Source of the DNA: Octopus bimaculoides
Taxonomy: Eukaryota
Length of the DNA: 57,965 nucleotides
Direction: 5' to 3'
Assembly (NCBI RefSeq): GCF_001194135.2
Contig: NC_068995.1
Coordinates: forward strand, 52,665,262 to 52,723,226
The notes under the pieces were generated by a model. It ran no database searches, was not told the DNA's origin, and saw only the letters and a program-made list of their open reading frames with translations. Both the position numbers and the translations under genes were made by a program. Shown in pieces: positions 908 through 54,302 of the stretch (its first letter is position 1; each line of letters starts with the position of its first letter).

Positions 908-2870
908 NNNNNNNNNNNNNNNNNNNNNNNNNNNNNNNNNNNNNNNNNNNNNNNNNNNNNNNNNNNNNNNNNNNNNNNNNNNNNNNNNNNNNNNNNNNNN
1001 NNNNNNNNNNNNNNNNNNNNNNNNNNNNNNNNNNNNNNNNNNNNNNNNNNNNNNNNNNNNNNNNNNNNNNNNNNNNNNNNNNNNNNNNNNNNNNNNNNNN
1101 NNNNNNNNNNNNNNNNNNNNNNNNNNNNNNNNNNNNNNNNNNNNNNNNNNNNNNNNNNNNNNNNNNNNNNNNNNNNNNNNNNNNNNNNNNNNNNNNNNNN
1201 NNNNNNNNNNNNNNNNNNNNNNNNNNNNNNNNNNNNNNNNNNNNNNNNNNNNNNNNNNNNNNNNNNNNNNNNNNNNNNNNNNNNNNNNNNNNNNNNNNNN
1301 NNNNNNNNNNNNNNNNNNNNNNNNNNNNNNNNNNNNNNNNNNNNNNNNNNNNNNNNNNNNNNNNNNNNNNNNNNNNNNNNNNNNNNNNNNNNNNNNNNNN
1401 NNNNNNNNNNNNNNNNNNNNNNNNNNNNNNNNNNNNNNNNNNNNNNNNNNNNNNNNNNNNNNNNNNNNNNNNNNNNNNNNNNNNNNNNNNNNNNNNNNNN
1501 NNNNNNNNNNNNNNNNNNNNNNNNNNNNNNNNNNNNNNNNNNNNNNNNNNNNNNNNNNNNNNNNNNNNNNNNNNNNNCTGAAAAGCAAGTGTGTATGTGT
1601 ACATATGTGTTTATGTGTATGTGTGTGTGTGTGTGTGTTTATGTATGTGTGTATGTTTGTGTATGTGTGTGTTTGTAGTTGTGATTTATATATGTTTATA
1701 AAATATATATAAGTAATATAAAGTTGTGAAATAAATATACTTACACACAATTATAATACACACTCATGGATATATACATACATATATACTCACATATACA
1801 CGTGTAGGATTCTGTGTGATTGCACTGAAAAGTGTGTATATGCGTCTATGTATGTCGTTATGTATGTGTGTGTGTCTTTTGTGTGTATGTGTGTTTAGTG
1901 TTTATAGATATTTAAAATAAATAATTGTAAATACAAACATACATTAGCTAAATATGTATACATACATATATATATACATATATATATATATACACAGCAG
2001 TGTGAACGTAAATGAAAGACCCCCACCTTTCCCATGTACTCACACATACACACAAAAATATACACTTGTACACCTACACAAACATGCACACACGCACAGC
2101 ATCAAATATTTGAACATAAATAGAATTACTATTAAGAATATAATTCTAAGAGCAGCTTTAATAATCGCCTGAACATGTTGGAAGAGACAGATTTAGGATA
2201 ATCCGCTCACTTAGATGTAGTGGTGTCTTTATAGAAGAATCAAGAACTATCCAAGAAAATTGTCTCAACAGTAGACACGTAGGAATATTTAAGGTGAGAC
2301 TTGAAACAAATATTAATACGGAACTTATACTAATCCACACAAAACAAAAAAATAGTCTGTTGCTCATTTCTGCTACAATTTTGGTCTTTTAGTGGTTCCA
2401 ACTATAATATAATACTATAGCGTTAGTTTATAATCCTAAGCAAAAGATTTCTCTACGTTGTCATATGGAAGCACAAAGGCACAAAGTAGAACTAAAGGGG
2501 TAATGTATGTTTTGTATTAGAGTGCAGAGGATTAAATGCCTTGTGGTGTTAGCGTCTACTTAGTACTTCTTCAGGCACTGAGTTCAAATAACTTCCAAGG
2601 TTAAATTAACATTTTGGATGGCAGTGAAAATGATGATGATGGTGGAGTTGATCAAGCAATGTGCTCTTTATGTTCTCACTGCAGCTGACGTAATAATAAT
2701 AATAATAATAATAATAATGATGATAATAATGAAGTCAACAATGGCAGAATTTGAACTCAGAGCATAAAGAGTTAGAACAAATGTCTCTAAGTATTTTGTC
2801 TGGCACACTAAGAATACTGCTGTGTTGCTGCTCTAATAATAATAATAATGATAATGATAATAATAATAAA

Positions 2871-4139: not shown

Positions 4140-4306
4140 TGATGCCAGGAATGATGATGATGATGATGATGATGATAAGGAGGAGGAGGATGGTGGTGAT
4201 AATAGTATGGTGAAAAAGATGATTATGGCAACAAAGATGATGATGATGATGATGATGATAACTAATACTGAGGATGTAAGTAACGATGATGATGAGAATG
4301 GCAGTT

Positions 4307-4350
<44 letters not shown>

Positions 4351-4455
4351 AGTGATGATGACAATAAGGATGGTGATTTCATCTATAATGATAACGATGA
4401 TGTCGATGATCACGATGATGAAGATTATGATGAAGATGATGATGATGATGATGAT
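4140..4455. repeat. Degenerate (GAT)n tract
   Basis: Direct inspection. Confidence 0.9.
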
Positions 4456-7759: not shown

Positions 7760-8440
7760 CATATCTGATGATGACGATGACGATGATGATGGTGATGGTG
7801 ATGATCATGATGATAGCATTGGTGGCGGTGGTGGCGGTGGTACGATGACGATGATGGCGCTGGTGATGCTGTTGTAAGTGTTGTTGTTGTTGCTGTTGTT
7901 GTTGTTGTTGTTGCTGTTGTAGCGTCAACGAACATGGTTGTGATGATGATGCTGCTATTGAGGATGATGGCGGCTACGGTGGTCAAGGCAGTGGTTGTGC
8001 GATGATGATGATGATGGTGGTGGTGTCGGTGCTGCTGCTGCTGTTGCTGATGGTATTTTTGCTGATGATAGCTGTTTGTGATGGTGATGGTGGCTGACGA
8101 TGGTGATGTTGATGATAGTGGTGGTGATGATGGTGATGATGATGGCTGTTGTAGTGATAGGATGCTGATGTTCATGATTGTGATGATGATGATGTTTGGG
8201 ACATTTTAATGATAATTGTGATAGTGATGCTCATGATGATGATTAATGATGATGATGATGATGATGATGGGGAGGAGAGAAAGAAGATGGTGAGGGTCGT
8301 GAAGGTGGTAATATTAATGATGAAAATGATGATGATGATGATGAAGATGTTGATGATTATGTTGATTATTATTATTATTATAATGATGATGCTGATGATG
8401 ATGCTGGTGGTGATGATGACGATGACGATGACGAAGACCA
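7760..8440. repeat. Compound (GAT/GGT/GTT/GCT)n tract
   Basis: Direct inspection. Confidence 0.9.
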
Positions 8441-10139
8441 TAATGGTGTCGAAAGGAAATAAAATACAAGTGTTTGACATGTTTAAAATATATATTTTAG
8501 AAGACAAAGGAATTTGAGGAAAAAGAAAAATAAGCACAAATAAAACAGTGACTAACAGACAGAAGCATACATACACAGACACACACACACACACATGCAT
8601 ACACATGCACACACAGAGAACACTGTCTTGCACACAATTTACGTATAATATATGTGCATGTGTTTAGGAATGTGTGTGTGCATATATATAACTGTGTGTG
8701 TGTGTGTGTGTGTGTATGGGAAACAGTTGTTCATTGATATATTTTATTGGTAAAAACAAAACAAATAAATCCCCCTCCCCCACCTAAAACAAAAAATTGT
8801 AAAAAAAAGTACAAACTGAAGACTATAAGAACTAAAACAGCAACAATAACAACAGCAATAATAATAATAATAATAAAGAAAATGCAGAAGGATTGTTACA
8901 CCTCCTCCTACTTCCCAGCCAAGAAAGAAAAAAAAAGAGAAAAATGAATAATTAGGAACAAAAAATAAAAATAAAAGTAGAAGTAAAAATAAAAATAAAT
9001 GACCAAATATGGTTCAGAAACTAACAAATGATATTAGATAAAAAGAAATATTGTTTGATTACAACAACAACAAGAGTGAAGAAAAGAAGAAAGAGAGGAA
9101 AGAATGAAAGAAACATGAAAGAAATTAAAAAGGAAATGAAAAGAAAAATCGAATAAATAATCAGGTATTTTTTAAATTTTATTTCTCACTTGGACAAAAA
9201 ATAGTGAAATATGTTGGTCAATATTTATGTGTGTATGAGTGAGTGTGTGTGTGTATACACACATACACATATATATATAGATACACAGAGGGATGGATGG
9301 ATGGATAGAGATATATATATATATATACACACAGATATCTATCTACATATATAGTATATATGTAATATATATATAATACATATAGTATATATGTAACATA
9401 TACTATATATGTTCTTTTTTCTTTTCCAGTGCATATTTGCATTATATTTATATATATATATGTATATATATATANNNNNNNNNNNNNNNNNNNNNNNNNN
9501 NNNNNNNNNNNNNNNNNNNNNNNNNNNNNNNNNNNNNNNNNNNNNNNNNNNNNNNNNNNNNNNNNNNNNNNNNNNNNNNNNNNNNNNNNNNNNNNNNNNN
9601 NNNNNNNNNNNNNNNNNNNNNNNNNNNNNNNNNNNNNNNNNNNNNNNNNNNNNNNNNNNNNNNNNNNNNNNNNNNNNNNNNNNNNNNNNNNNNNNNNNNN
9701 NNNNNNNNNNNNNNNNNNNNNNNNNNNNNNNNNNNNNNNNNNNNNNNNNNNNNNNNNNNNNNNNNNNNNNNNNNNNNNNNNNNNNNNNNNNNNNNNNNNN
9801 NNNNNNNNNNNNNNNNNNNNNNNNNNNNNNNNNNNNNNNNNNNNNNNNNNNNNNNNNNNNNNNNNNNNNNNNNNNNNNNNNNNNNNNNNNNNNNNNNNNN
9901 NNNNNNNNNNNNNNNNNNNNNNNNNNNNNNNNNNNNNNNNNNNNNNNNNNNNNNNNNNNNNNNNNNNNNNNNNNNNNNNNNNNNNNNNNNNNNNNNNNNN
10001 NNNNNNNNNNNNNNNNNNNNNNNNNNNNNNNNNNNNNNNNNNNNNNNNNNNNNNNNNNNNNNNNNNNNNNNNNNNNNNNNNNNNNNNNNNNNNNNNNNNN
10101 NNNNNNNNNNNNNNNNNNNNNNNNNNNNNNNNNNNNNNN

Positions 10140-11982: not shown

Positions 11983-12190
11983 TCATCATGATCATGGTCA
12001 AAATTTAGTGTTTGCTTTTCCATACCCGATGCCAGCATGGGTTGGACAGTGTAACAGAAAACCGACAAGGTGCAGGGCTACATCAAGCTCCAATGTCATA
12101 TTTGTCACAGTTTCTACAGCTCAATGCCCTTCATAACACCAACCACTTCACAGAGTGTGGACTGGGTGCTTTTTGTCATGTCACCAGCTC
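11980..12190 (-). mobile_element. Old RTE 3'-end fragment
   Basis: CCAGCATGGGTTGGACAG..CTACAGCTCAATGCCCTTCATAACACCAACCAC. Confidence 0.6.
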
Positions 12191-12267
12191 TACTGAGATT
12201 GCTATGTAACTCACAAGACAGAAAATGTCAGGTTATCTCGTAAATAATGTTCAAAATATCATATATG

Positions 12268-12442
12268 TACCGTTCTATATTTAAGAGATGAGGAATTATT
12301 TACATTATTTACATTAGACGGATATTTGTCCTCATCTTGTTTGTTGTTAACACAACGTTTCGGCTGATATACCCTCCAGCCTTCATCAGGTGTCTTGGGG
12401 GAAATTCTGAACCTGAGTTCTCATTCCTAAGATATTTTTCAA

Positions 12443-12492
<50 letters not shown>

Positions 12493-12602
12493 TCACTGCC
12501 TGGAATCGAACTCGGAGTCTTGGGGTTAGTAGTCCGTGCTCTTAACCACTATGCCTGTGGGCATATGGCGTAGTGGTTAAGAGCGCAAGCTACTAACCCC
12601 AA
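12268..12602 (-). mobile_element. Composite tRNA-headed, hammerhead-bearing non-autonomous retroposon (SINE/PLE-like) with an inverted duplicated head
   Basis: Head with A-box-like (GGCATAGTGG) and B-box (GAGTTCGATTCC) motifs at about 12490-12555; (AAT)n at 12444-12488; hammerhead at 12349-12394; 9-bp 3' hairpin; inverted head copy at 12567-12602. Confidence 0.7.
12349..12394 (-). ncRNA. Minimal type I hammerhead ribozyme (Penelope-like-element type)
   Basis: Minus strand reads GACAC-CUGAUGA-A-GGCUG-GAGGGUAUAU-CAGCC-GAAA-CG-UU-GUGUU: intact CUGAUGA and GAAA cores, 5-bp stem II, 5-bp stem I (GACAC/GUGUU) and palindromic AACGUU in place of stem III. Confidence 0.8.
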
Positions 12603-14766: not shown

Positions 14767-15469
14767 TTTGCTTANNNNNNNNNNNNNNNNNNNNNNNNNN
14801 NNNNNNNNNNNNNNNNNNNNNNNNNNNNNNNNNNNNNNNNNNNNNNNNNNNNNNNNNNNNNNNNNNNNNNNNNNNNNNNNNNNNNNNNNNNNNNNNNNNN
14901 NNNNNNNNNNNNNNNNNNNNNNNNNNNNNNNNNNNNNNNNNNNNNNNNNNNNNNNNNNNNNNNNNNNNNNNNNNNNNNNNNNNNNNNNNNNNNNNNNNNN
15001 NNNNNNNNNNNNNNNNNNNNNNNNNNNNNNNNNNNNNNNNNNNNNNNNNNNNNNNNNNNNNNNNNNNNNNNNNNNNNNNNNNNNNNNNNNNNNNNNNNNN
15101 NNNNNNNNNNNNNNNNNNNNNNNNNNNNNNNNNNNNNNNNNNNNNNNNNNNNNNNNNNNNNNNNNNNNNNNNNNNNNNNNNNNNNNNNNNNNNNNNNNNN
15201 NNNNNNNNNNNNNNNNNNNNNNNNNNNNNNNNNNNNNNNNNNNNNNNNNNNNNNNNNNNNNNNNNNNNNNNNNNNNNNNNNNNNNNNNNNNNNNNNNNNN
15301 NNNNNNNNNNNNNNNNNNNNNNNNNNNNNNNNNNNNNNNNNNNNNNNNNNNNNNNNNNNNNNNNNNNNNNNNNNNNNNNNNNNNGTCCTGTACCCTGATA
15401 TGCATGTATATACACATGTAGATGTAAGTATGTACATATATGTGTGTATACATGTATATATATTCTTTG

Positions 15470-23520: not shown

Positions 23521-23690
23521 TAGGCACAGGATTGGCTGTGTGGTAAATAGCTTGCTTACCAACCACATGGCTCTGAGTTCATTCCCACTGCGTGGCACCT
23601 TGGGCAAGTGTCTTCTACTATAGCCTCAGGATGACCAAAGCCTTGCGAGTGGATTTGGTAGACGGAAACTGAAAGAAGCCTGTCATATAT
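23521..23690 (+). mobile_element. SINE family A, 5' half
   Basis: TAGGCACAGGATTGGCTGTGTGGTAA...GACGGAAACTGAAAGAAGCC. Confidence 0.85.
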
Positions 23691-24129
23691 GGGCTGATAT
23701 TTAAAAAATGCAGTTGGGTGTGATTTATGTAGGATTTGGTTACAGTTTCTAGCAGGATGAGGCTGTTTGATTGGCTTATATGGAGGTGAATTATATCAAG
23801 CTCATAGTCTGGAGAAGTCTGCAAAAATGACGGGGAAAAGATAGTCTACCTGACTAAACCTTAAAATAAGAATTTGAAATGATTGAATGAATCCGGTATA
23901 TCTTTTGAAGGCTTGGAATGAATCATTGAAACGAAAGACCGCTGGACTGGGTTCTCAAAATTACATGCTCAATAAATTGGAGCATAATGGTGTTCCCAAC
24001 ATGAGCAATAAAGGATATATACGAGTCTCTGCAATAGAGACATAAACAAACCAGCACCAGTTGTCAAATGGTGGGGAACAAACACAAAGACGTGCACACA
24101 CACACACACCCACACACCACTCACATATG

Positions 24130-24287
24130 ACTGACTACCATATTGTTTCTATCAGGCAAATCCACTTGCAAGGCATTGGTCAGCTCTAGGCTATAGTAGA
24201 AGATACTTGCCCAAGGTGTCAGGCAGCGAAACTGAACCTCAAAGCATGTGGTTGAGAAGCAAACATCTTGCTACACAGCTATGCCTG
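24130..24287 (-). mobile_element. SINE family A, degraded 5' half
   Basis: Contains GGCTATAGTAGAAGATACTTGCCCAAGGTG on the plus strand, as in other minus-strand copies. Confidence 0.75.
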
Positions 24288-24413
24288 TTAAAGTGGGGGT
24301 GGGGGTGCAGGATCGGGATTTGAACTCACAGCACAGAGATATACAGAATGAAAGCCAGCAAGATGTTTTTTTTTCTCTCACATGCCAACGACTCTACAAA
24401 GCCACTGCTTAAG

Positions 24414-27788: not shown

Positions 27789-28126
27789 TATAATATATAC
27801 AAAAATATAATATATACATATATATAATATATACATATATATANNNNNNNNNNNNNNNNNNNNNNNNNNNNNNNNNNNNNNNNNNNNNNNNNNNNNNNNN
27901 NNNNNNNNNNNNNNNNNNNNNNNNNNNNNNNNNNNNNNNNNNNNNNNNNNNNNNNNNNNNNNNNNNNNNNNNNNNNNNNNNNNNNNNNNNNNNNNNNNNN
28001 NNNNNNNNNNNNNNNNNNNNNNNNNNNNNNNNNNNNNNNNNNNNNNNNNNNNNNNNNNNNNNNNNNNNNNNNNNNNNNNNNNNNNNNNNNNNNNNNNNNN
28101 NNNNNNNNNNNNNNNNNNNNNNNNNN

Positions 28127-37814: not shown

Positions 37815-38309
37815 NNNNNNNNNNNNNNNNNNNNNNNNNNNNNNNNNNNNNNNNNNNNNNNNNNNNNNNNNNNNNNNNNNNNNNNNNNNNNNNNNNNNNN
37901 NNNNNNNNNNNNNNNNNNNNNNNNNNNNNNNNNNNNNNNNNNNNNNNNNNNNNNNNNNNNNNNNNNNNNNNNNNNNNNNNNNNNNNNNNNNNNNNNNNNN
38001 NNNNNNNNNNNNNNNNNNNNNNNNNNNNNNNNNNNNNNNNNNNNNNNNNNNNNNNNNNNNNNNNNNNNNNNNNNNNNNNNNNNNNNNNNNNNNNNNNNNN
38101 NNNNNNNNNNNNNNNNNNNNNNNNNNNNNNNNNNNNNNNNNNNNNNNNNNNNNNNNNNNNNNNNNNNNNNNNNNNNNNNNNNNNNNNNNNNNNNNNNNNN
38201 NNNNNGTCTGTACACAGAGAAAGAAGGAAGCGGGAGGAAGAATTGGAGAAGACAAGGAAGACATAATCTGAGAGTTAACATAAAAAGACAGCATTGAAGC
38301 CAAACATTT

Positions 38310-38790: not shown

Positions 38791-39110
38791 TATATATATA
38801 TATATGTATAAACATACAGGTACACACACAATGTATATATATTTGTGTGCATGTATGTATATATATAGAAAGAGAGAAAAAAGAGAGAGAGAAAGAGACA
38901 GAAAGTATATTGTATTGCCAGCCAGACTTAAACAGTCTGCATAAAAACACATGAGTGATCACTGTAATCCATACCTTGCCACCGACAAACACAAACGCTT
39001 ACACACACTTTCAGATACACAGGCACACTCATATACGTGTATAGGACATTACAATCAGTATAAGACTAAAGACTCCAGCGATAAGGGGAAACCATTGTAG
39101 TGTTACTTAC

Positions 39111-39392
39111 ATTTCACCTCTAGTCGTACGGAGGCTGTCTTGGGACGTCCAATGACTGTGTGAGATAATTTGTTTTCAGCTTGACATATTACAGTCCTTC
39201 GGTGTTCCATGCGAGTCACTGGATCAAATGTCAGTGTTTCTCCTTTGTGTATTAAATATCCCGATTCTGAGAGCCATTTGTATTGTGTGTCTGGAGGATT
39301 TCCAGGTCTTGCGTGACATGTAAGCGTTTGCACATCTCCTGCAATCCACGGTAAGCTGCTCTGAGATGTGATCTTTGGACTTCCTGGCGTAT
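39111..39392 (-). CDS. IgSF exon B: Ig domain (YTPGSPKI...LTCHARPGNPPDTQYKW...LTFDPVTRMEHRRTVICQAEN...VRLEVK)
   Basis: Acceptor TTCTTTCAG with AG at 39394-39393; donor GTAAGT from 39110; 282 bp; C-x-A-x-P-G-N-P-P...W...C-x-A-E-N Ig motif. Confidence 0.93.
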
Positions 39393-39932
39393 CTGAAAGA
39401 AAAATCATAAAAGAAATGAAAATTATTAATAAAAATGAATGGTGAATGAAAGTCAAAAGATATCAAATTTCTACTTTCACTTCTCTTTATATAAGTTTAA
39501 AGACTTTTCATGTTGTGAATCAGAACATTTTTCTACATAAAGCATTGATGGCTCATATACCATCAAGGCTAATATTTATTGAGTATTTTGAAAAGAATAG
39601 TCAGAAAGTATCCTCGGTATTCACATACATATATATTATGAAGATATAGCTTAATTGGTAAGTGGTTTTATTTGAGACCATGTGCTGGAACTAAAAATGA
39701 TTGCAGTATGGTAGATATATATTAGCCACTCAGAAACAGACAAAGACTGTGAACTTCACTTAAACATTTATTGTTTGTAATAGGTTGCTGTGCGACAATG
39801 TTCTCAGTGACCAGGTTGCAGTTTGGAGCAAGGAGAATTTTGACACCACATTACAAACCATAAATGTTTAAGTGAAGTTAACGGCCTTTGTGCATTTGTG
39901 AATCATTAATATATGTCATTGAAGCTACACTC

Positions 39933-43213: not shown

Positions 43214-44118
43214 NNNNNNNNNNNNNNNNNNNNNNNNNNNNNNNNNNNNNNNNNNNNNNNNNNNNNNNNNNNNNNNNNNNNNNNNNNNNNNNNNNNNNNN
43301 NNNNNNNNNNNNNNNNNNNNNNNNNNNNNNNNNNNNNNNNNNNNNNNNNNNNNNNNNNNNNNNNNNNNNNNNNNNNNNNNNNNNNNNNNNNNNNNNNNNN
43401 NNNNNNNNNNNNNNNNNNNNNNNNNNNNNNNNNNNNNNNNNNNNNNNNNNNNNNNNNNNNNNNNNNNNNNNNNNNNNNNNNNNNNNNNNNNNNNNNNNNN
43501 NNNNNNNNNNNNNNNNNNNNNNNNNNNNNNNNNNNNNNNNNNNNNNNNNNNNNNNNNNNNNNNNNNNNNNNNNNNNNNNNNNNNNNNNNNNNNNNNNNNN
43601 NNNNNNNNNNNNNNNNNNNNNNNNNNNNNNNNNNNNNNNNNNNNNNNNNNNNNNNNNNNNNNNNNNNNNNNNNNNNNNNNNNNNNNNNNNNNNNNNNNNN
43701 NNNNNNNNNNNNNNNNNNNNNNNNNNNNNNNNNNNNNNNNNNNNNNNNNNNNNNNNNNNNNNNNNNNNNNNNNNNNNNNNNNNNNNNNNNNNNNNNNNNN
43801 NNNNNNNNNNNNNNNNNNNNNNNNNNNNNNNNNNNNNNNNNNNNNNNNNNNNNNNNNNNNNNNNNNNNNNNNNNNNNNNNNNNNNNNNNNNNNNNNNNNN
43901 NNNNNNNNNNNNNNNNNNNNNNNNNNNNNNNNNNNNNNNNNNNNNNNNNNNNNNNNNNNNNNNNNNNNNNNNNNNNNNNNNNNNNNNNNNNNNNNNNNNN
44001 NNNNNNNNNNNNNNNNNNNNNNNNNNNNNNNNNNNNNNNNNNNNNNNNNNNNNNNNNNNNNNNNNNNNNNNNNNNNNNNNNNNNNNNNNNNNNNNNNNNN
44101 NNNNNNNNNNNNNNNNNN
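43214..44118. other. Largest assembly gap (N run) inside the Ig-gene intron; other gaps at 908, 3964, 4543, 9475, 11926, 14775, 18401, 27844, 34803, 37815 and 51680
   Basis: N runs, most flanked by (TA)n or other simple repeats. Confidence 0.95.
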
Positions 44119-53667: not shown

Positions 53668-53809
53668 CTCTTACTCTTTTACTCTTTTCAGTCACCTTGT
53701 AAAATTCGTTTGACTAAAATTCTTCAAGGCAGTGCCCCAACATGGCTGCAGTCCAATGAGTGAAACACGTACAAGATAAAAAGATGTAAAAAAACACAAT
53801 AATACTCAC

Positions 53810-54076
53810 AATAGATATTTAACTGTTTGGTAACCGTCTTCTTCCATTTGTGAAACATGGCAGTGCATACACAGTCCGTTCCGTGCAAATGTCGAGTGAG
53901 AAAGAAAAATAATGCACATGCTTGTTTGCCTGAGCTGTTCACACCACCACATGTGAGTTGTACTCTTGGAGCTGGTTGGGATCCAATCCAGCTACATGCT
54001 ACTGTTAATGTAGTATTTTCAGTTTCTGGTCTGTCCGTTTCAAACCCTTCTATTAGGATTTTACCACGTGGAATAT
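53810..54076 (-). CDS. IgSF exon A: atypical Cys-rich Ig-like domain (xIPRGKILIEG...TLTVACSWIGSQPAPRVQLTC...TDCVCTAMF...KQLNIY)
   Basis: Acceptor (T)n-CCAG with AG at 54078-54077; donor GTGAGT from 53809; 267 bp open frame; Ig-type B- and F-strand Cys spacing; N-glycosylation sequons NTT and NSS. Confidence 0.82.
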
Positions 54077-54150
54077 CTGGAAAAAAAAAAAAGGACACAA
54101 AAATGATTTGATAATAATGATAATGATAAATAATAATAATAATAATAATA

Positions 54151-54302
54151 ATCATCATCGTTTAACGTCCGCTTTCCATGCTAGCATGGGTTGGATGATT
54201 TGACTGAGGACTGGTGAACCAGATGGCTACACCAGGCTCCAATCTGATTTGGCAGAGTTTCTACAGCTGGATGCCCTTTCTAACGCCAACCACTCCAAGA
54301 GT
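54151..54302 (-). mobile_element. Young RTE 3'-end fragment
   Basis: Near-identical to 41528-41670; preceded by a (CAT)n tail. Confidence 0.75.

What the first reader, a model, noticed from the sequence alone, without database searches (positions are those of the whole stretch)
12268..12602. tRNA-headed retroposon carrying a sense-strand hammerhead ribozyme: a candidate Pol III-driven, Penelope-mobilised SINE/retrozyme hybrid
Seen, reading the minus strand: tRNA-like head (A-box-like GGCATAGTGG, B-box GAGTTCGATTCC), (AAT)n, a hammerhead with intact CUGAUGA/GAAA cores at 12394-12349, and a 3' hairpin. There is no T4 Pol III terminator between the head and 12256, so one transcript of about 300 nt would contain all modules. 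Established: minimal type I hammerheads with a palindrome replacing stem III occur in Penelope-like element terminal repeats and cleave as dimers, whereas tRNA-headed SINEs normally take their tails from LINEs. Inference: this is a non-autonomous element combining a Pol III promoter with PLE-type self-processing, and it may form monomer or circular RNAs. I do not know whether it has been described.
Basis: partly seen in the sequence, partly recalled or inferred. Interest (0 to 1): 0.85.

Follow-up and report, generated by a model that had tools for sequence, protein, structure and literature searches.

The report
Hammerhead retroelement unit beside SINE fragment
The hammerhead ribozyme motif and the tRNA-like promoter are both really there, but they most likely belong to two different mobile elements that landed next to each other, not to one new hybrid element.

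Summary
All the described modules exist on the minus strand. The hammerhead (12394-12349) is a textbook minimal type I hammerhead of the kind found in Penelope-like elements. It is the only descriptor hit in the window, against 0 in 300 simulated windows. A covariance model built from unrelated sequences scores it at 24.4 bits (E=2e-5). The head has Pol III A and B boxes in tRNA spacing, against 0.01 expected by chance.

The single-element reading did not hold up. A second copy, in a related species (L122), aligns without gaps to window 12295-12412 only, at 85.6% identity. Its flanks are unrelated to ours, with no head and no AAT tract. The unit's 3' end falls inside the loop of the proposed 3' hairpin, so the hairpin and the T4 stop lie outside it.

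The same roughly 120-nt unit occurs in another organism (L124-L127). There it forms 126-nt tandem arrays and the 3' module of a roughly 360-nt repeat, arranged in the tandem and inverted patterns typical of Penelope-like elements. That repeat has no detectable similarity to our head.

Best reading: a solo hammerhead unit, inert on its own, lying 32 nt from an (AAT)15 tract that adjoins a tRNA-SINE head fragment. The hybrid SINE remains possible, at about 0.12. SINE-like retroposons carrying a hammerhead are already known from schistosomes.

The parts
12295..12412 (-). Hammerhead-bearing repeat unit of about 118 nt. This is the stretch shared with the other copies.
   Evidence: Gapless 85.6% alignment to L122 281-398. 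nhmmer with the L124/L125 family profile matches 12413-12299 at E=1.1e-14, to profile positions 246-358. Flanks are unrelated.
12349..12394 (-). Minimal type I hammerhead. Helix I is 12394-12390 with 12353-12349. Core CUGAUGA is 12389-12383. A12382 is bulged. Helix II is 12381-12376 with 12367-12362. GAAA is 12361-12358. The ACGU palindrome is 12358-12355. The predicted cleavage site lies between U12354 and G12353.
   Evidence: 28.5 bits, E=8e-8; 24.4 bits, E=2e-5, training set without the GGCUG/CAGCC helix; hammerhead conformation -12.0 against MFE -12.6 kcal/mol.
12413..12444 (-). 32-nt stretch between (AAT)n and the shared unit. Its origin is unresolved: a 5' extension of the unit, or flank.
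   Evidence: Not aligned to L122 or to the family profile.
12445..12488 (-). (AAT)14.7 microsatellite, perfect.
   Evidence: Perfect (AAT)n runs of 7 or more units occur at about six other places in the window, none next to this head or a hammerhead.
12491..12556 (-). tRNA-derived SINE-like head with a Pol III A box (12556-12546) and B box (12512-12502).
   Evidence: Weak similarity to the head of the abundant SINE at 23533-23588 (nhmmer E=0.009). No tRNA by ARAGORN or Rfam.
12567..12602 (+). Inverted partial copy of the first 36 nt of the head. Together with 12520-12555 it forms a long hairpin.
   Evidence: arms 86% complementary, 11 nt apart. (dG -56.6 kcal/mol, z=-8.25). All 5 differences between the arms are transitions (read).
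12286..12294 (-). It lies just outside the repeat unit.
   Evidence: Read. Homology to L122 ends at 12295, and L122 has no such arm.
12253..12256 (-). First TTTT on the sense strand, a potential Pol III stop. It lies outside the repeat unit.

Best explanation
Window 12412-12295 (minus strand) is a solo copy of a short retroelement unit of about 120 nt that carries a minimal type I hammerhead. The family is of the kind associated with Penelope-like elements (PLEs) and their non-autonomous derivatives, the 'non-LTR retrozymes'.

Inferred mechanism for the family. Tandem copies are transcribed. Two hammerheads pair through the ACGU palindrome to form a shared helix III and cut the RNA to unit length. 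A PLE reverse transcriptase/GIY-YIG endonuclease then copies the RNA into AT-rich or microsatellite DNA, often truncating it at the 5' end.

At this locus. The copy is single, so its hammerhead has no partner in cis and is most likely an inert relic that happens to be still intact. It lies 32 nt from an (AAT)15 tract. That tract adjoins a separate tRNA-derived SINE head fragment, which has its own inverted partial duplicate. Head and hammerhead unit are neighbours, not one element.

Shown: motif identity, unit boundaries, presence of the unit elsewhere without the head, and tandem and inverted arrangements of the family in another organism.
Inferred: PLE-dependent mobilisation, dimeric cleavage, and inertness here.
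For: 1. Motif. It meets the defining features of the min-HHR of Cervera & De la Pena 2014 (PMC4209133). It is the only descriptor hit in the window, against 0 of 300 simulations. The covariance model trained on 28 sequences with other helix II sequences gives 24.4 bits, E=2e-5, with the next hit at E=0.41.

2. Boundaries. L122, from a related species (81% nt identity at an orthologous exon locus), shares only 12295-12412 at 85.6%. Local-alignment scores for both flanks equal those of shuffled sequence. No A/B-box pair was found in L122.

3. Family. In L124-L127 the same hammerhead unit occurs in 126-nt tandem arrays. It differs at helix II pair 4, U-A to C-G, a change on both sides. It is also the 3' module of a roughly 360-nt repeat with a ladder of 5' truncation points: profile starts at 2-5, 47-52, 157, 179, 224 and 254-260. 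Some copies sit as inverted head-to-head pairs. The literature gives these patterns as PLE hallmarks (PMC8557442; PMC8969392). Our unit starts at profile position 246, close to where the array units start.

4. Head not linked. The family profile finds nothing in our head, even at E<=1000 on that stretch alone. All 6 hits of the exhaustive protein search fall within ORF residues 2-47, which is the tail.

5. PLE link for this hammerhead subtype. L059 has an ACGU-type, A-bulged min-HHR about 1.5 kb downstream of an RVT_1 + GIY-YIG ORF on the same strand.

6. Chance adjacency does happen. In L125 a multi-copy tRNA-SINE head directly abuts a hammerhead array, while its other copies have no hammerhead nearby.
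Against: - Only one additional copy from a related species could be recovered. A 5'-truncated copy of a longer head-bearing element would look the same.
- Head and unit share strand and orientation, lie 78 nt apart including the AAT tract, and have no T4 between them.
- The origin of 12413-12444 is unexplained.
- No PLE ORF is present in the window.
- The RT ORFs near the arrays in L124 look LINE-like, and no GIY-YIG is on record for them. PLE dependence of this particular family is therefore not shown.
- Microsatellites were not enriched next to min-HHRs in the termite-metagenome set. 'Insertion at a microsatellite' is taken from the literature, not shown here.
Confidence: 0.62

Rival explanations
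1. One non-autonomous retroposon consists of a tRNA-derived Pol III head, an AAT-rich linker expanded at this locus, and a PLE-type hammerhead tail that serves as the 3' recognition module for a PLE reverse transcriptase. L122 would then be a 5'-truncated copy.
For: Head and unit have the same orientation and are close together. The A and B boxes are intact. There is no T4 before 12256. PLE-type insertions are commonly 5'-truncated (PMC8969392), and the related family shows a wide truncation ladder. SINE-like retroposons with hammerheads exist in schistosomes: SMalpha and Sjalpha, as cited in PMC8490949.
Against: The other copy has no head, and its boundary coincides with the family's short-unit boundary. 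The protein-space search found tail-only relatives. The head is not homologous to the 5' part of the related longer element. A T4-free run of this length is common here, at 19% of start points. The proposed 3' hairpin and terminator lie outside the shared unit. The head has its own tail-less inverted partial copy.
Confidence: 0.12
2. The unit is the 3'-terminal piece (solo pseudo-LTR fragment) of a heavily 5'-truncated autonomous Penelope-like element, not a copy of a dedicated short non-autonomous family.
For: Min-HHRs lie in PLE pseudo-LTRs, and most genomic motifs are dispersed single copies attributed to truncated PLEs (PMC4209133). L059 shows the same hammerhead subtype downstream of a PLE ORF.
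Against: Our copy and L122 both start at nearly the same point. That point matches the start of the tandem units in L124-L127, which suggests a preferred short unit. No PLE coding sequence was recovered from this species.
Confidence: 0.2
3. The hammerhead-like motif is a chance match in AT-rich DNA and has no retroelement origin.
For: Rfam hammerhead models do not match. The bare pattern CTGATGA..GAAAC is expected 0.25 times per window.
Against: The full descriptor gave 0 hits in 300 simulations. The covariance model E-values are 2e-5 to 8e-8. Homologous copies exist in two other sources.
Confidence: 0.01

Closest known systems
Minimal type I hammerheads (min-HHR) of metazoan Penelope-like elements (Cervera & De la Pena 2014, PMC4209133; Lunse et al. 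2017, cited there)
   Same: CUGAUGA and GAAA cores. No helix III. Palindromic 15.2-16.2 (ACGU). [quoted passage not shown] A G10.1-C11.1 pair. A long helix II (6 bp) and a short helix I (5 bp). Mostly dispersed as single copies.
   Different: No PLE coding sequence or pseudo-LTR context is visible at this locus. Self-cleavage was not tested. The palindrome here is the shortest form (4 nt), whereas the termite-metagenome examples have ACAUGU.
Non-LTR retrozymes, proposed as non-autonomous PLE derivatives (PMC7761336; bioRxiv 10.64898/2026.07.22.740005)
   Same: A short non-coding unit with a type I hammerhead. The related family in L124-L127 forms head-to-tail arrays (126-nt period). 'Solo' monomers are described for retrozymes.
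   Different: Here there is a single unit, not a tandem array. The unit (about 120 nt) is shorter than described retrozymes. It has no stable self-paired fold (z=-1.3). It has a minimal hammerhead, not a canonical one with loop-loop contacts.
SMalpha / Sjalpha SINE-like retroposons of schistosomes (Ferbeyre 1998 and Laha 2000, as cited in PMC8490949)
   Different: Those are established multi-copy units. Here head and hammerhead unit could not be shown to travel together. No sequence comparison was possible because the original papers are not held.
tRNA-derived SINEs of octopus (Ohshima & Okada 1994, cited in PMC4824008 and PMC4758252)
   Same: The head has internal A and B boxes in tRNA spacing. 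It weakly resembles the head of the abundant SINE in this window.
   Different: No tRNA fold is detected. Only about 65 nt of head is followed directly by a microsatellite. No second full copy is present in the window.
Roughly 360-nt hammerhead-bearing repeat in ENA assembly ERZ21867824
   Same: Its last 113 positions are homologous to window 12413-12299 (E=1e-14), including sequence 3' of the hammerhead.
   Different: It has a different 5' part of about 245 nt with no similarity to our head. The source organism is unknown.

Membership tests
min-HHR (PLE-type minimal type I hammerhead) | Conserved cores CUGANGA and GAAA with a cleavable H17 | tested here: met
   CUGAUGA at 12389-12383, GAAA at 12361-12358, U12354 at position 17.
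min-HHR (PLE-type minimal type I hammerhead) | No helix III; positions 15.1-16.1 form a palindrome that allows a dimer | tested here: met
   ACGU at 12358-12355 with no loop. The definition comes from PMC4209133.
min-HHR (PLE-type minimal type I hammerhead) | Unpaired nucleotide between 9 and 10.1, a G10.1-C11.1 pair, and an enlarged helix II | tested here: met
   A12382 is bulged. G12381 pairs with C12362. Helix II has 6 bp.
min-HHR (PLE-type minimal type I hammerhead) | Scores as a member against a model built from independent members | tested here: met
   Model R2: 24.4 bits, E=2e-5, the only hit below E=0.4 in 58 kb. The training set shows covariation, although it was selected by a descriptor that requires pairing.
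min-HHR (PLE-type minimal type I hammerhead) | Lies in the pseudo-LTR of a Penelope-like element (RT + GIY-YIG) | tested here: not met
   No PLE-like coding sequence in the window (tblastn). The literature notes that most genomic copies are solo, so this does not exclude membership of the motif class.
min-HHR (PLE-type minimal type I hammerhead) | Self-cleavage as a dimer | not testable with these tools
   Needs in vitro transcription of monomer and dimer constructs.
Canonical type I hammerhead (Rfam Hammerhead_1 and relatives) | Match to the Rfam covariance model, including helix III | tested here: not met
   No hammerhead family at gathering score or at E<=10.
   1 hit against 0.01 expected.
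   L122 has the tail unit only. The protein-space search gave tail-only hits. The sample is one extra copy, so this is weak.
   Only TA-rich low-complexity matches at the proposed ends. Such sequence is everywhere in this window.
Non-LTR retrozyme | Tandem head-to-tail repeats, each with a hammerhead | tested here: not met
   There is a single hammerhead in 58 kb and no tandem repeat of that period at the locus. The related family in L124/L125 does meet it.
Non-LTR retrozyme | Circular RNA with a stable, highly self-paired fold | tested here: not met
   Only the fold was tested. The tail folds no better than shuffled sequence (z=-1.3). Circular RNA itself cannot be tested with these tools.

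The most novel reading that the evidence does not exclude
The head, an AAT-rich linker and the hammerhead unit are one Pol III-transcribed SINE that borrows a PLE-type hammerhead tail. It would be a cephalopod counterpart of the schistosome SMalpha elements, but with a minimal dimer-only ribozyme. The headless copy in L122 would be a 5'-truncated insertion.
Probability: 0.12. Interest if true: 0.6.

Novelty: new member of a known kind. Interest (0 to 1): 0.3.

Why it matters
As it stands, this is a clean and still intact example of a PLE-type minimal hammerhead in what appears to be an octopod genome. Its roughly 120-nt unit is recognisably conserved in a second species and in an unrelated assembly. 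That is useful for annotating this repeat family, which Rfam models miss entirely.

If the hybrid reading were true, it would be the first tRNA-headed SINE shown to depend on Penelope-like elements outside flatworms. It would also give a testable link between Pol III transcription and ribozyme-bearing retroelements.

The practical lesson concerns SINE- and microsatellite-rich genomes. A promoter-like head beside a ribozyme is expected now and then by adjacency alone, so unit boundaries taken from other copies are needed before a composite element is called.

Tried and rejected
- Rfam at gathering score and at E<=10 gave no hammerhead and no tRNA. ARAGORN found no tRNA.
- Self-BLAST and nhmmer of head and tail against the window found no second copy of the tail. 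They found only the inverted half-head and one weak SINE-head hit.
- Word-indexed protein searches with ORFs across the element found nothing. Exact look-ups of window ORFs found nothing.
- DNA pattern scans of viral and prokaryotic collections found nothing.
- The metagenome scan returned no cephalopod copies, only termite-gut, human-gut and other contigs. I used these as an independent training set.
- My eye alignments suggested that the sequence upstream of the unit in L122, and the 5' part of the L124/L125 element, were homologous to our head and linker. Shuffle tests and nhmmer rejected this.
- I considered that the 'tRNA-like' B-box motif inside the L124/L125 repeat makes that repeat a tRNA-headed SINE. 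I did not adopt this: the motif sits about 150 nt from the 5' end, no cloverleaf is found, and Rfam and ARAGORN give no hit.
- A 12-nt repeat, CCCCAAGAC[T/A]CC, occurs in both the head and helix I (D4). About one such match is expected by chance in the 900 nt compared.
- Microsatellite enrichment next to min-HHRs in the termite set was not seen.
- The first covariance model (R1) was partly circular, because half of its training set was retrieved with our own helix II sequence. I rebuilt it without those sequences as R2.

Full report
**What is at the locus (minus strand)**

Reading from 12602 down to 12253, the minus strand holds, in order:
- an inverted partial copy of the head (12602-12567);
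- 11 nt;
- a tRNA-like head (12556-12491);
- (AAT)14.7 (12488-12445, 100% perfect);
- 32 nt of unassigned sequence (12444-12413);
- a stretch containing the hammerhead (12394-12349);
- an AAT-like stretch ending at 12295;
- the 3' arm of a 9-bp hairpin (12294-12286);
- the first TTTT (12256-12253).

**The head**

AGGCATAGTGG (12556-12546) and AGTTCGATTCC (12512-12502) each match the Pol III A and B box consensus with one mismatch. Their starts are 45 nt apart, against 44 in a tRNA. The pattern occurs once in the window and 0.01 times per simulated window.

ARAGORN calls no tRNA, and Rfam finds no tRNA even at E<=10. The head is therefore a SINE-type head, not a tRNA gene.

Its first 36 nt are repeated in inverted orientation 11 nt upstream (86% complementary). 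The two arms form a hairpin of -56.6 kcal/mol, z=-8.25. All five differences between the arms are transitions. nhmmer finds one weak relative, the head of the abundant SINE at 23533-23588 (E=0.009).

**The hammerhead**

Its anatomy is:
- helix I GACAC/GUGUU (5 bp);
- core CUGAUGA;
- one extra A;
- helix II GGCUGG/UCAGCC (6 bp, 8-nt loop);
- GAAA, then C-G-U-U, with cleavage expected after U12354.

There is no helix III. A15.1-C15.2-G16.2-U16.1 reads ACGU, a palindrome that can pair only with a second copy.

These are exactly the features Cervera & De la Pena list for the 'min-HHR' of metazoan Penelope-like elements: no helix III, a nucleotide between 9 and 10.1, a G10.1-C11.1 pair, a large helix II and a palindromic 15.2-16.2 (PMC4209133).

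Rfam hammerhead models do not see it, as expected for a motif without helix III.

A descriptor I wrote for this architecture hits the window once, here. It hit none of 300 first-order Markov simulations of the window.

**An independent test of the hammerhead**

A metagenome scan with CTGATGANGGCTG..CAGCCGAAAC returned 120 contigs, mostly termite-gut samples. The descriptor found 72 min-HHRs in them. All have a bulged nucleotide, and they carry many different helix sequences. Covariation over the two helices is strong, although the set was selected by a descriptor that requires pairing.

Model R1 (50 sequences) scores the window motif at 28.5 bits, E=8e-8. Half of R1's training set had been retrieved with our own helix II sequence, so I rebuilt it from 28 sequences with other helices. 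This model, R2, still gives 24.4 bits and E=2e-5, with the next hit at E=0.41.

In isolation the 46-mer adopts the helix I and II arrangement within 0.6 kcal/mol of its minimum free energy.

One contig (L059, the same locus as L017) carries the same subtype: an A bulge and GAAACGUU|G. It lies about 1.5 kb downstream, on the same strand, of an ORF with RVT_1 and GIY-YIG domains, which is the PLE architecture.

**Is it one element? Tests inside the window**

No second copy of the tail exists in the window.

The T4-free run of 310 nt is real, but 19% of random start points in this window do as well.

Perfect (AAT)n runs of 7 or more units occur at about six other places in the 58 kb. None of them has this head or a hammerhead beside it.

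**Is it one element? Other copies**

The antisense frame is open across all three modules (93 codons, 12292-12570). An exhaustive phmmer search of 1.84 billion representative proteins gave six hits. All fall within residues 2-47, which is the hammerhead side. None falls on the head side.

P0007 led to Logan contigs L122 and L123. They come from a species that is 80.7% identical to the window at an orthologous exon-flanking locus.

L122 aligns to the window without gaps over 118 nt (window 12295-12412, 85.6% identity) and nowhere else nearby. The sequences on either side align no better than shuffled sequence: 16 against 16.8±2.1 upstream, and 18 against 18.1±2.7 downstream. The unit itself scores 151.

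L122 has no A/B-box pair and no AAT tract next to the unit. Its hammerhead is decayed, with C3 changed to U and an A·A mismatch in helix II.

The shared unit therefore ends at 12295. The unit begins near 12412.

**The wider family**

P0003 to P0006 led to long contigs of ENA assembly ERZ21867824 (L124-L127). They contain the same hammerhead, CUGAAGA-A-GGCCGG..CGGCC-GAAAC-GUU|G. Helix II pair 4 is C-G where ours is U-A, a change on both sides. Model R2 scores these motifs at up to 25.2 bits.

The motif occurs there in two settings:
- in 126-nt head-to-tail arrays;
- as the 3' module of a roughly 360-nt repeat with at least four full-length copies.

A profile of the full-length copies matches window 12413-12299 at E=1.1e-14, to profile positions 246-358 only. 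It finds nothing in our head or linker, even when that stretch is searched alone at E<=1000.

Copies of that family start at profile positions 2-5, 47-52, 157, 179, 224 and 254-260. Some sit as inverted head-to-head pairs next to tandem units. The literature gives 5' truncation, partial tandems and adjacent inverted truncated copies as the signature of PLE insertion (PMC8557442; PMC8969392).

The RT ORFs near one array look LINE-like, and no GIY-YIG is on record for them. The autonomous partner is therefore not identified.

In L125 a multi-copy tRNA-SINE head directly abuts an array. This shows that such neighbourhoods arise by adjacency.

**Weighing the evidence**

The hammerhead and the head are both real. 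The evidence on whether they are linked is thin, resting on one extra copy plus a distant family, but all of it points the same way. The mobile unit is about 120 nt, and it occurs without the head. Its start coincides with the start of the short tandem unit in the distant family.

5' truncation could hide a head in L122, so I leave the hybrid at about 0.12.

I cannot say whether the (AAT)15 is the SINE fragment's own tail, a pre-existing microsatellite used as a target, or an expansion of the unit's AAT-rich terminus. The unit itself ends in TAATGTAAATAATGTAAATAAT.

A solo min-HHR cannot form helix III, and there is no partner within the window. Cleavage at this locus is therefore unlikely. 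The motif's intactness is not strong evidence of selection: at about 7% decay per copy, I estimate that roughly 8% of copies would keep all of about 35 constrained positions.

**What is already known**

- Min-HHRs are reported in thousands of copies across invertebrate and lower-vertebrate genomes (PMC4209133).
- Non-LTR retrozymes have been proposed as non-autonomous PLE derivatives (PMC7761336; bioRxiv 10.64898/2026.07.22.740005).
- SINE-like retroposons bearing a hammerhead are known from schistosomes (PMC8490949, citing Ferbeyre 1998 and Laha 2000).
- I found no paper describing a tRNA-headed SINE with a PLE-type tail in cephalopods.

The organism was not identified by any tool.

Noticed in passing
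window 12520-12602: The SINE-like head and an inverted copy of its first 36 nt form a near-perfect long hairpin (dG -56.6 kcal/mol, z=-8.25). All five arm differences are transitions, several of them at CpG. It could be two head-to-head insertions or a snap-back duplication. If transcribed, it would be a long double-stranded RNA. Rfam's weak microRNA hits here only reflect the hairpin.
   Followed up: partly
L124 3501-3863, 9036-9416, 10186-10537; L125 2460-2809, 5754-6300; L126 3030-3594; L127 3073-3543: A roughly 360-nt hammerhead-bearing repeat family in ENA assembly ERZ21867824 (organism unknown). It shows 126-nt tandem arrays, a ladder of 5' truncations and inverted head-to-head pairs. 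It carries a conserved internal B-box-like motif, GCAGGTTCAATCCTGAC, about 140 nt upstream of the hammerhead. Whether that motif is a Pol III promoter is open.
   Followed up: partly
L001-L120 (metagenome contigs, many from termite-gut samples): There are 72 minimal hammerheads in 562 kb. Seventy of them (all but the ACGU type on L017/L059, not termite-gut contigs) have the ACAUGU palindrome. All 72 have a bulged nucleotide, and helices I and II are highly varied. This is presumably host insect DNA rich in PLE-type motifs. A second group of contigs, including human-gut samples, carries hammerheads with a long helix III.
   Followed up: partly
L059 5885-5918 and 7399-8826 (minus strand); L017: A PLE ORF (RVT_1 + GIY-YIG) has an ACGU-type min-HHR about 1.5 kb downstream. 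The hammerhead lies 47 nt after a (TA)n microsatellite. This spacing of microsatellite and hammerhead echoes the window's layout, where 55 nt separate (AAT)15 from CUGAUGA.
   Followed up: partly
window 12029-12174, 23524-23690, 24100-24300, and long (ATG)n/(TGA)n tracts at 4151-4455 and 8079-8431: There are several copies and fragments of an abundant tRNA-derived SINE with the head ...GTGTGGTAAATAGC...GAGTTCATTCCCACTG. There are also very long trinucleotide microsatellites that may be expanded SINE or LINE tails. The fragment at 12029-12174 lies just downstream of the finding.
   Followed up: partly
window 39103-39456 (-) and 53724-54158 (-): These look like coding exons on the same strand as the finding. 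The first has an immunoglobulin domain (Pfam Ig_3, E=4e-7) and is 99% identical in protein to a Logan contig of a related species (L121). The finding may lie in an intron of this gene, or 3' of it.
   Followed up: partly
window 12389-12400 and 12514-12525: The 12-mer CCCCAAGAC[T/A]CC (sense strand) occurs just before the B box of the head and again as the 5' strand of hammerhead helix I. About one such match is expected by chance in the region compared.
   Followed up: yes
window 908-1577, 9475-10139, 14775-15384, 27844-28126, 37815-38205, 43214-44118 and smaller runs: Runs of N mark assembly gaps. The window comes from a draft scaffold, so repeats near the gaps may be missing or collapsed.
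   Followed up: no
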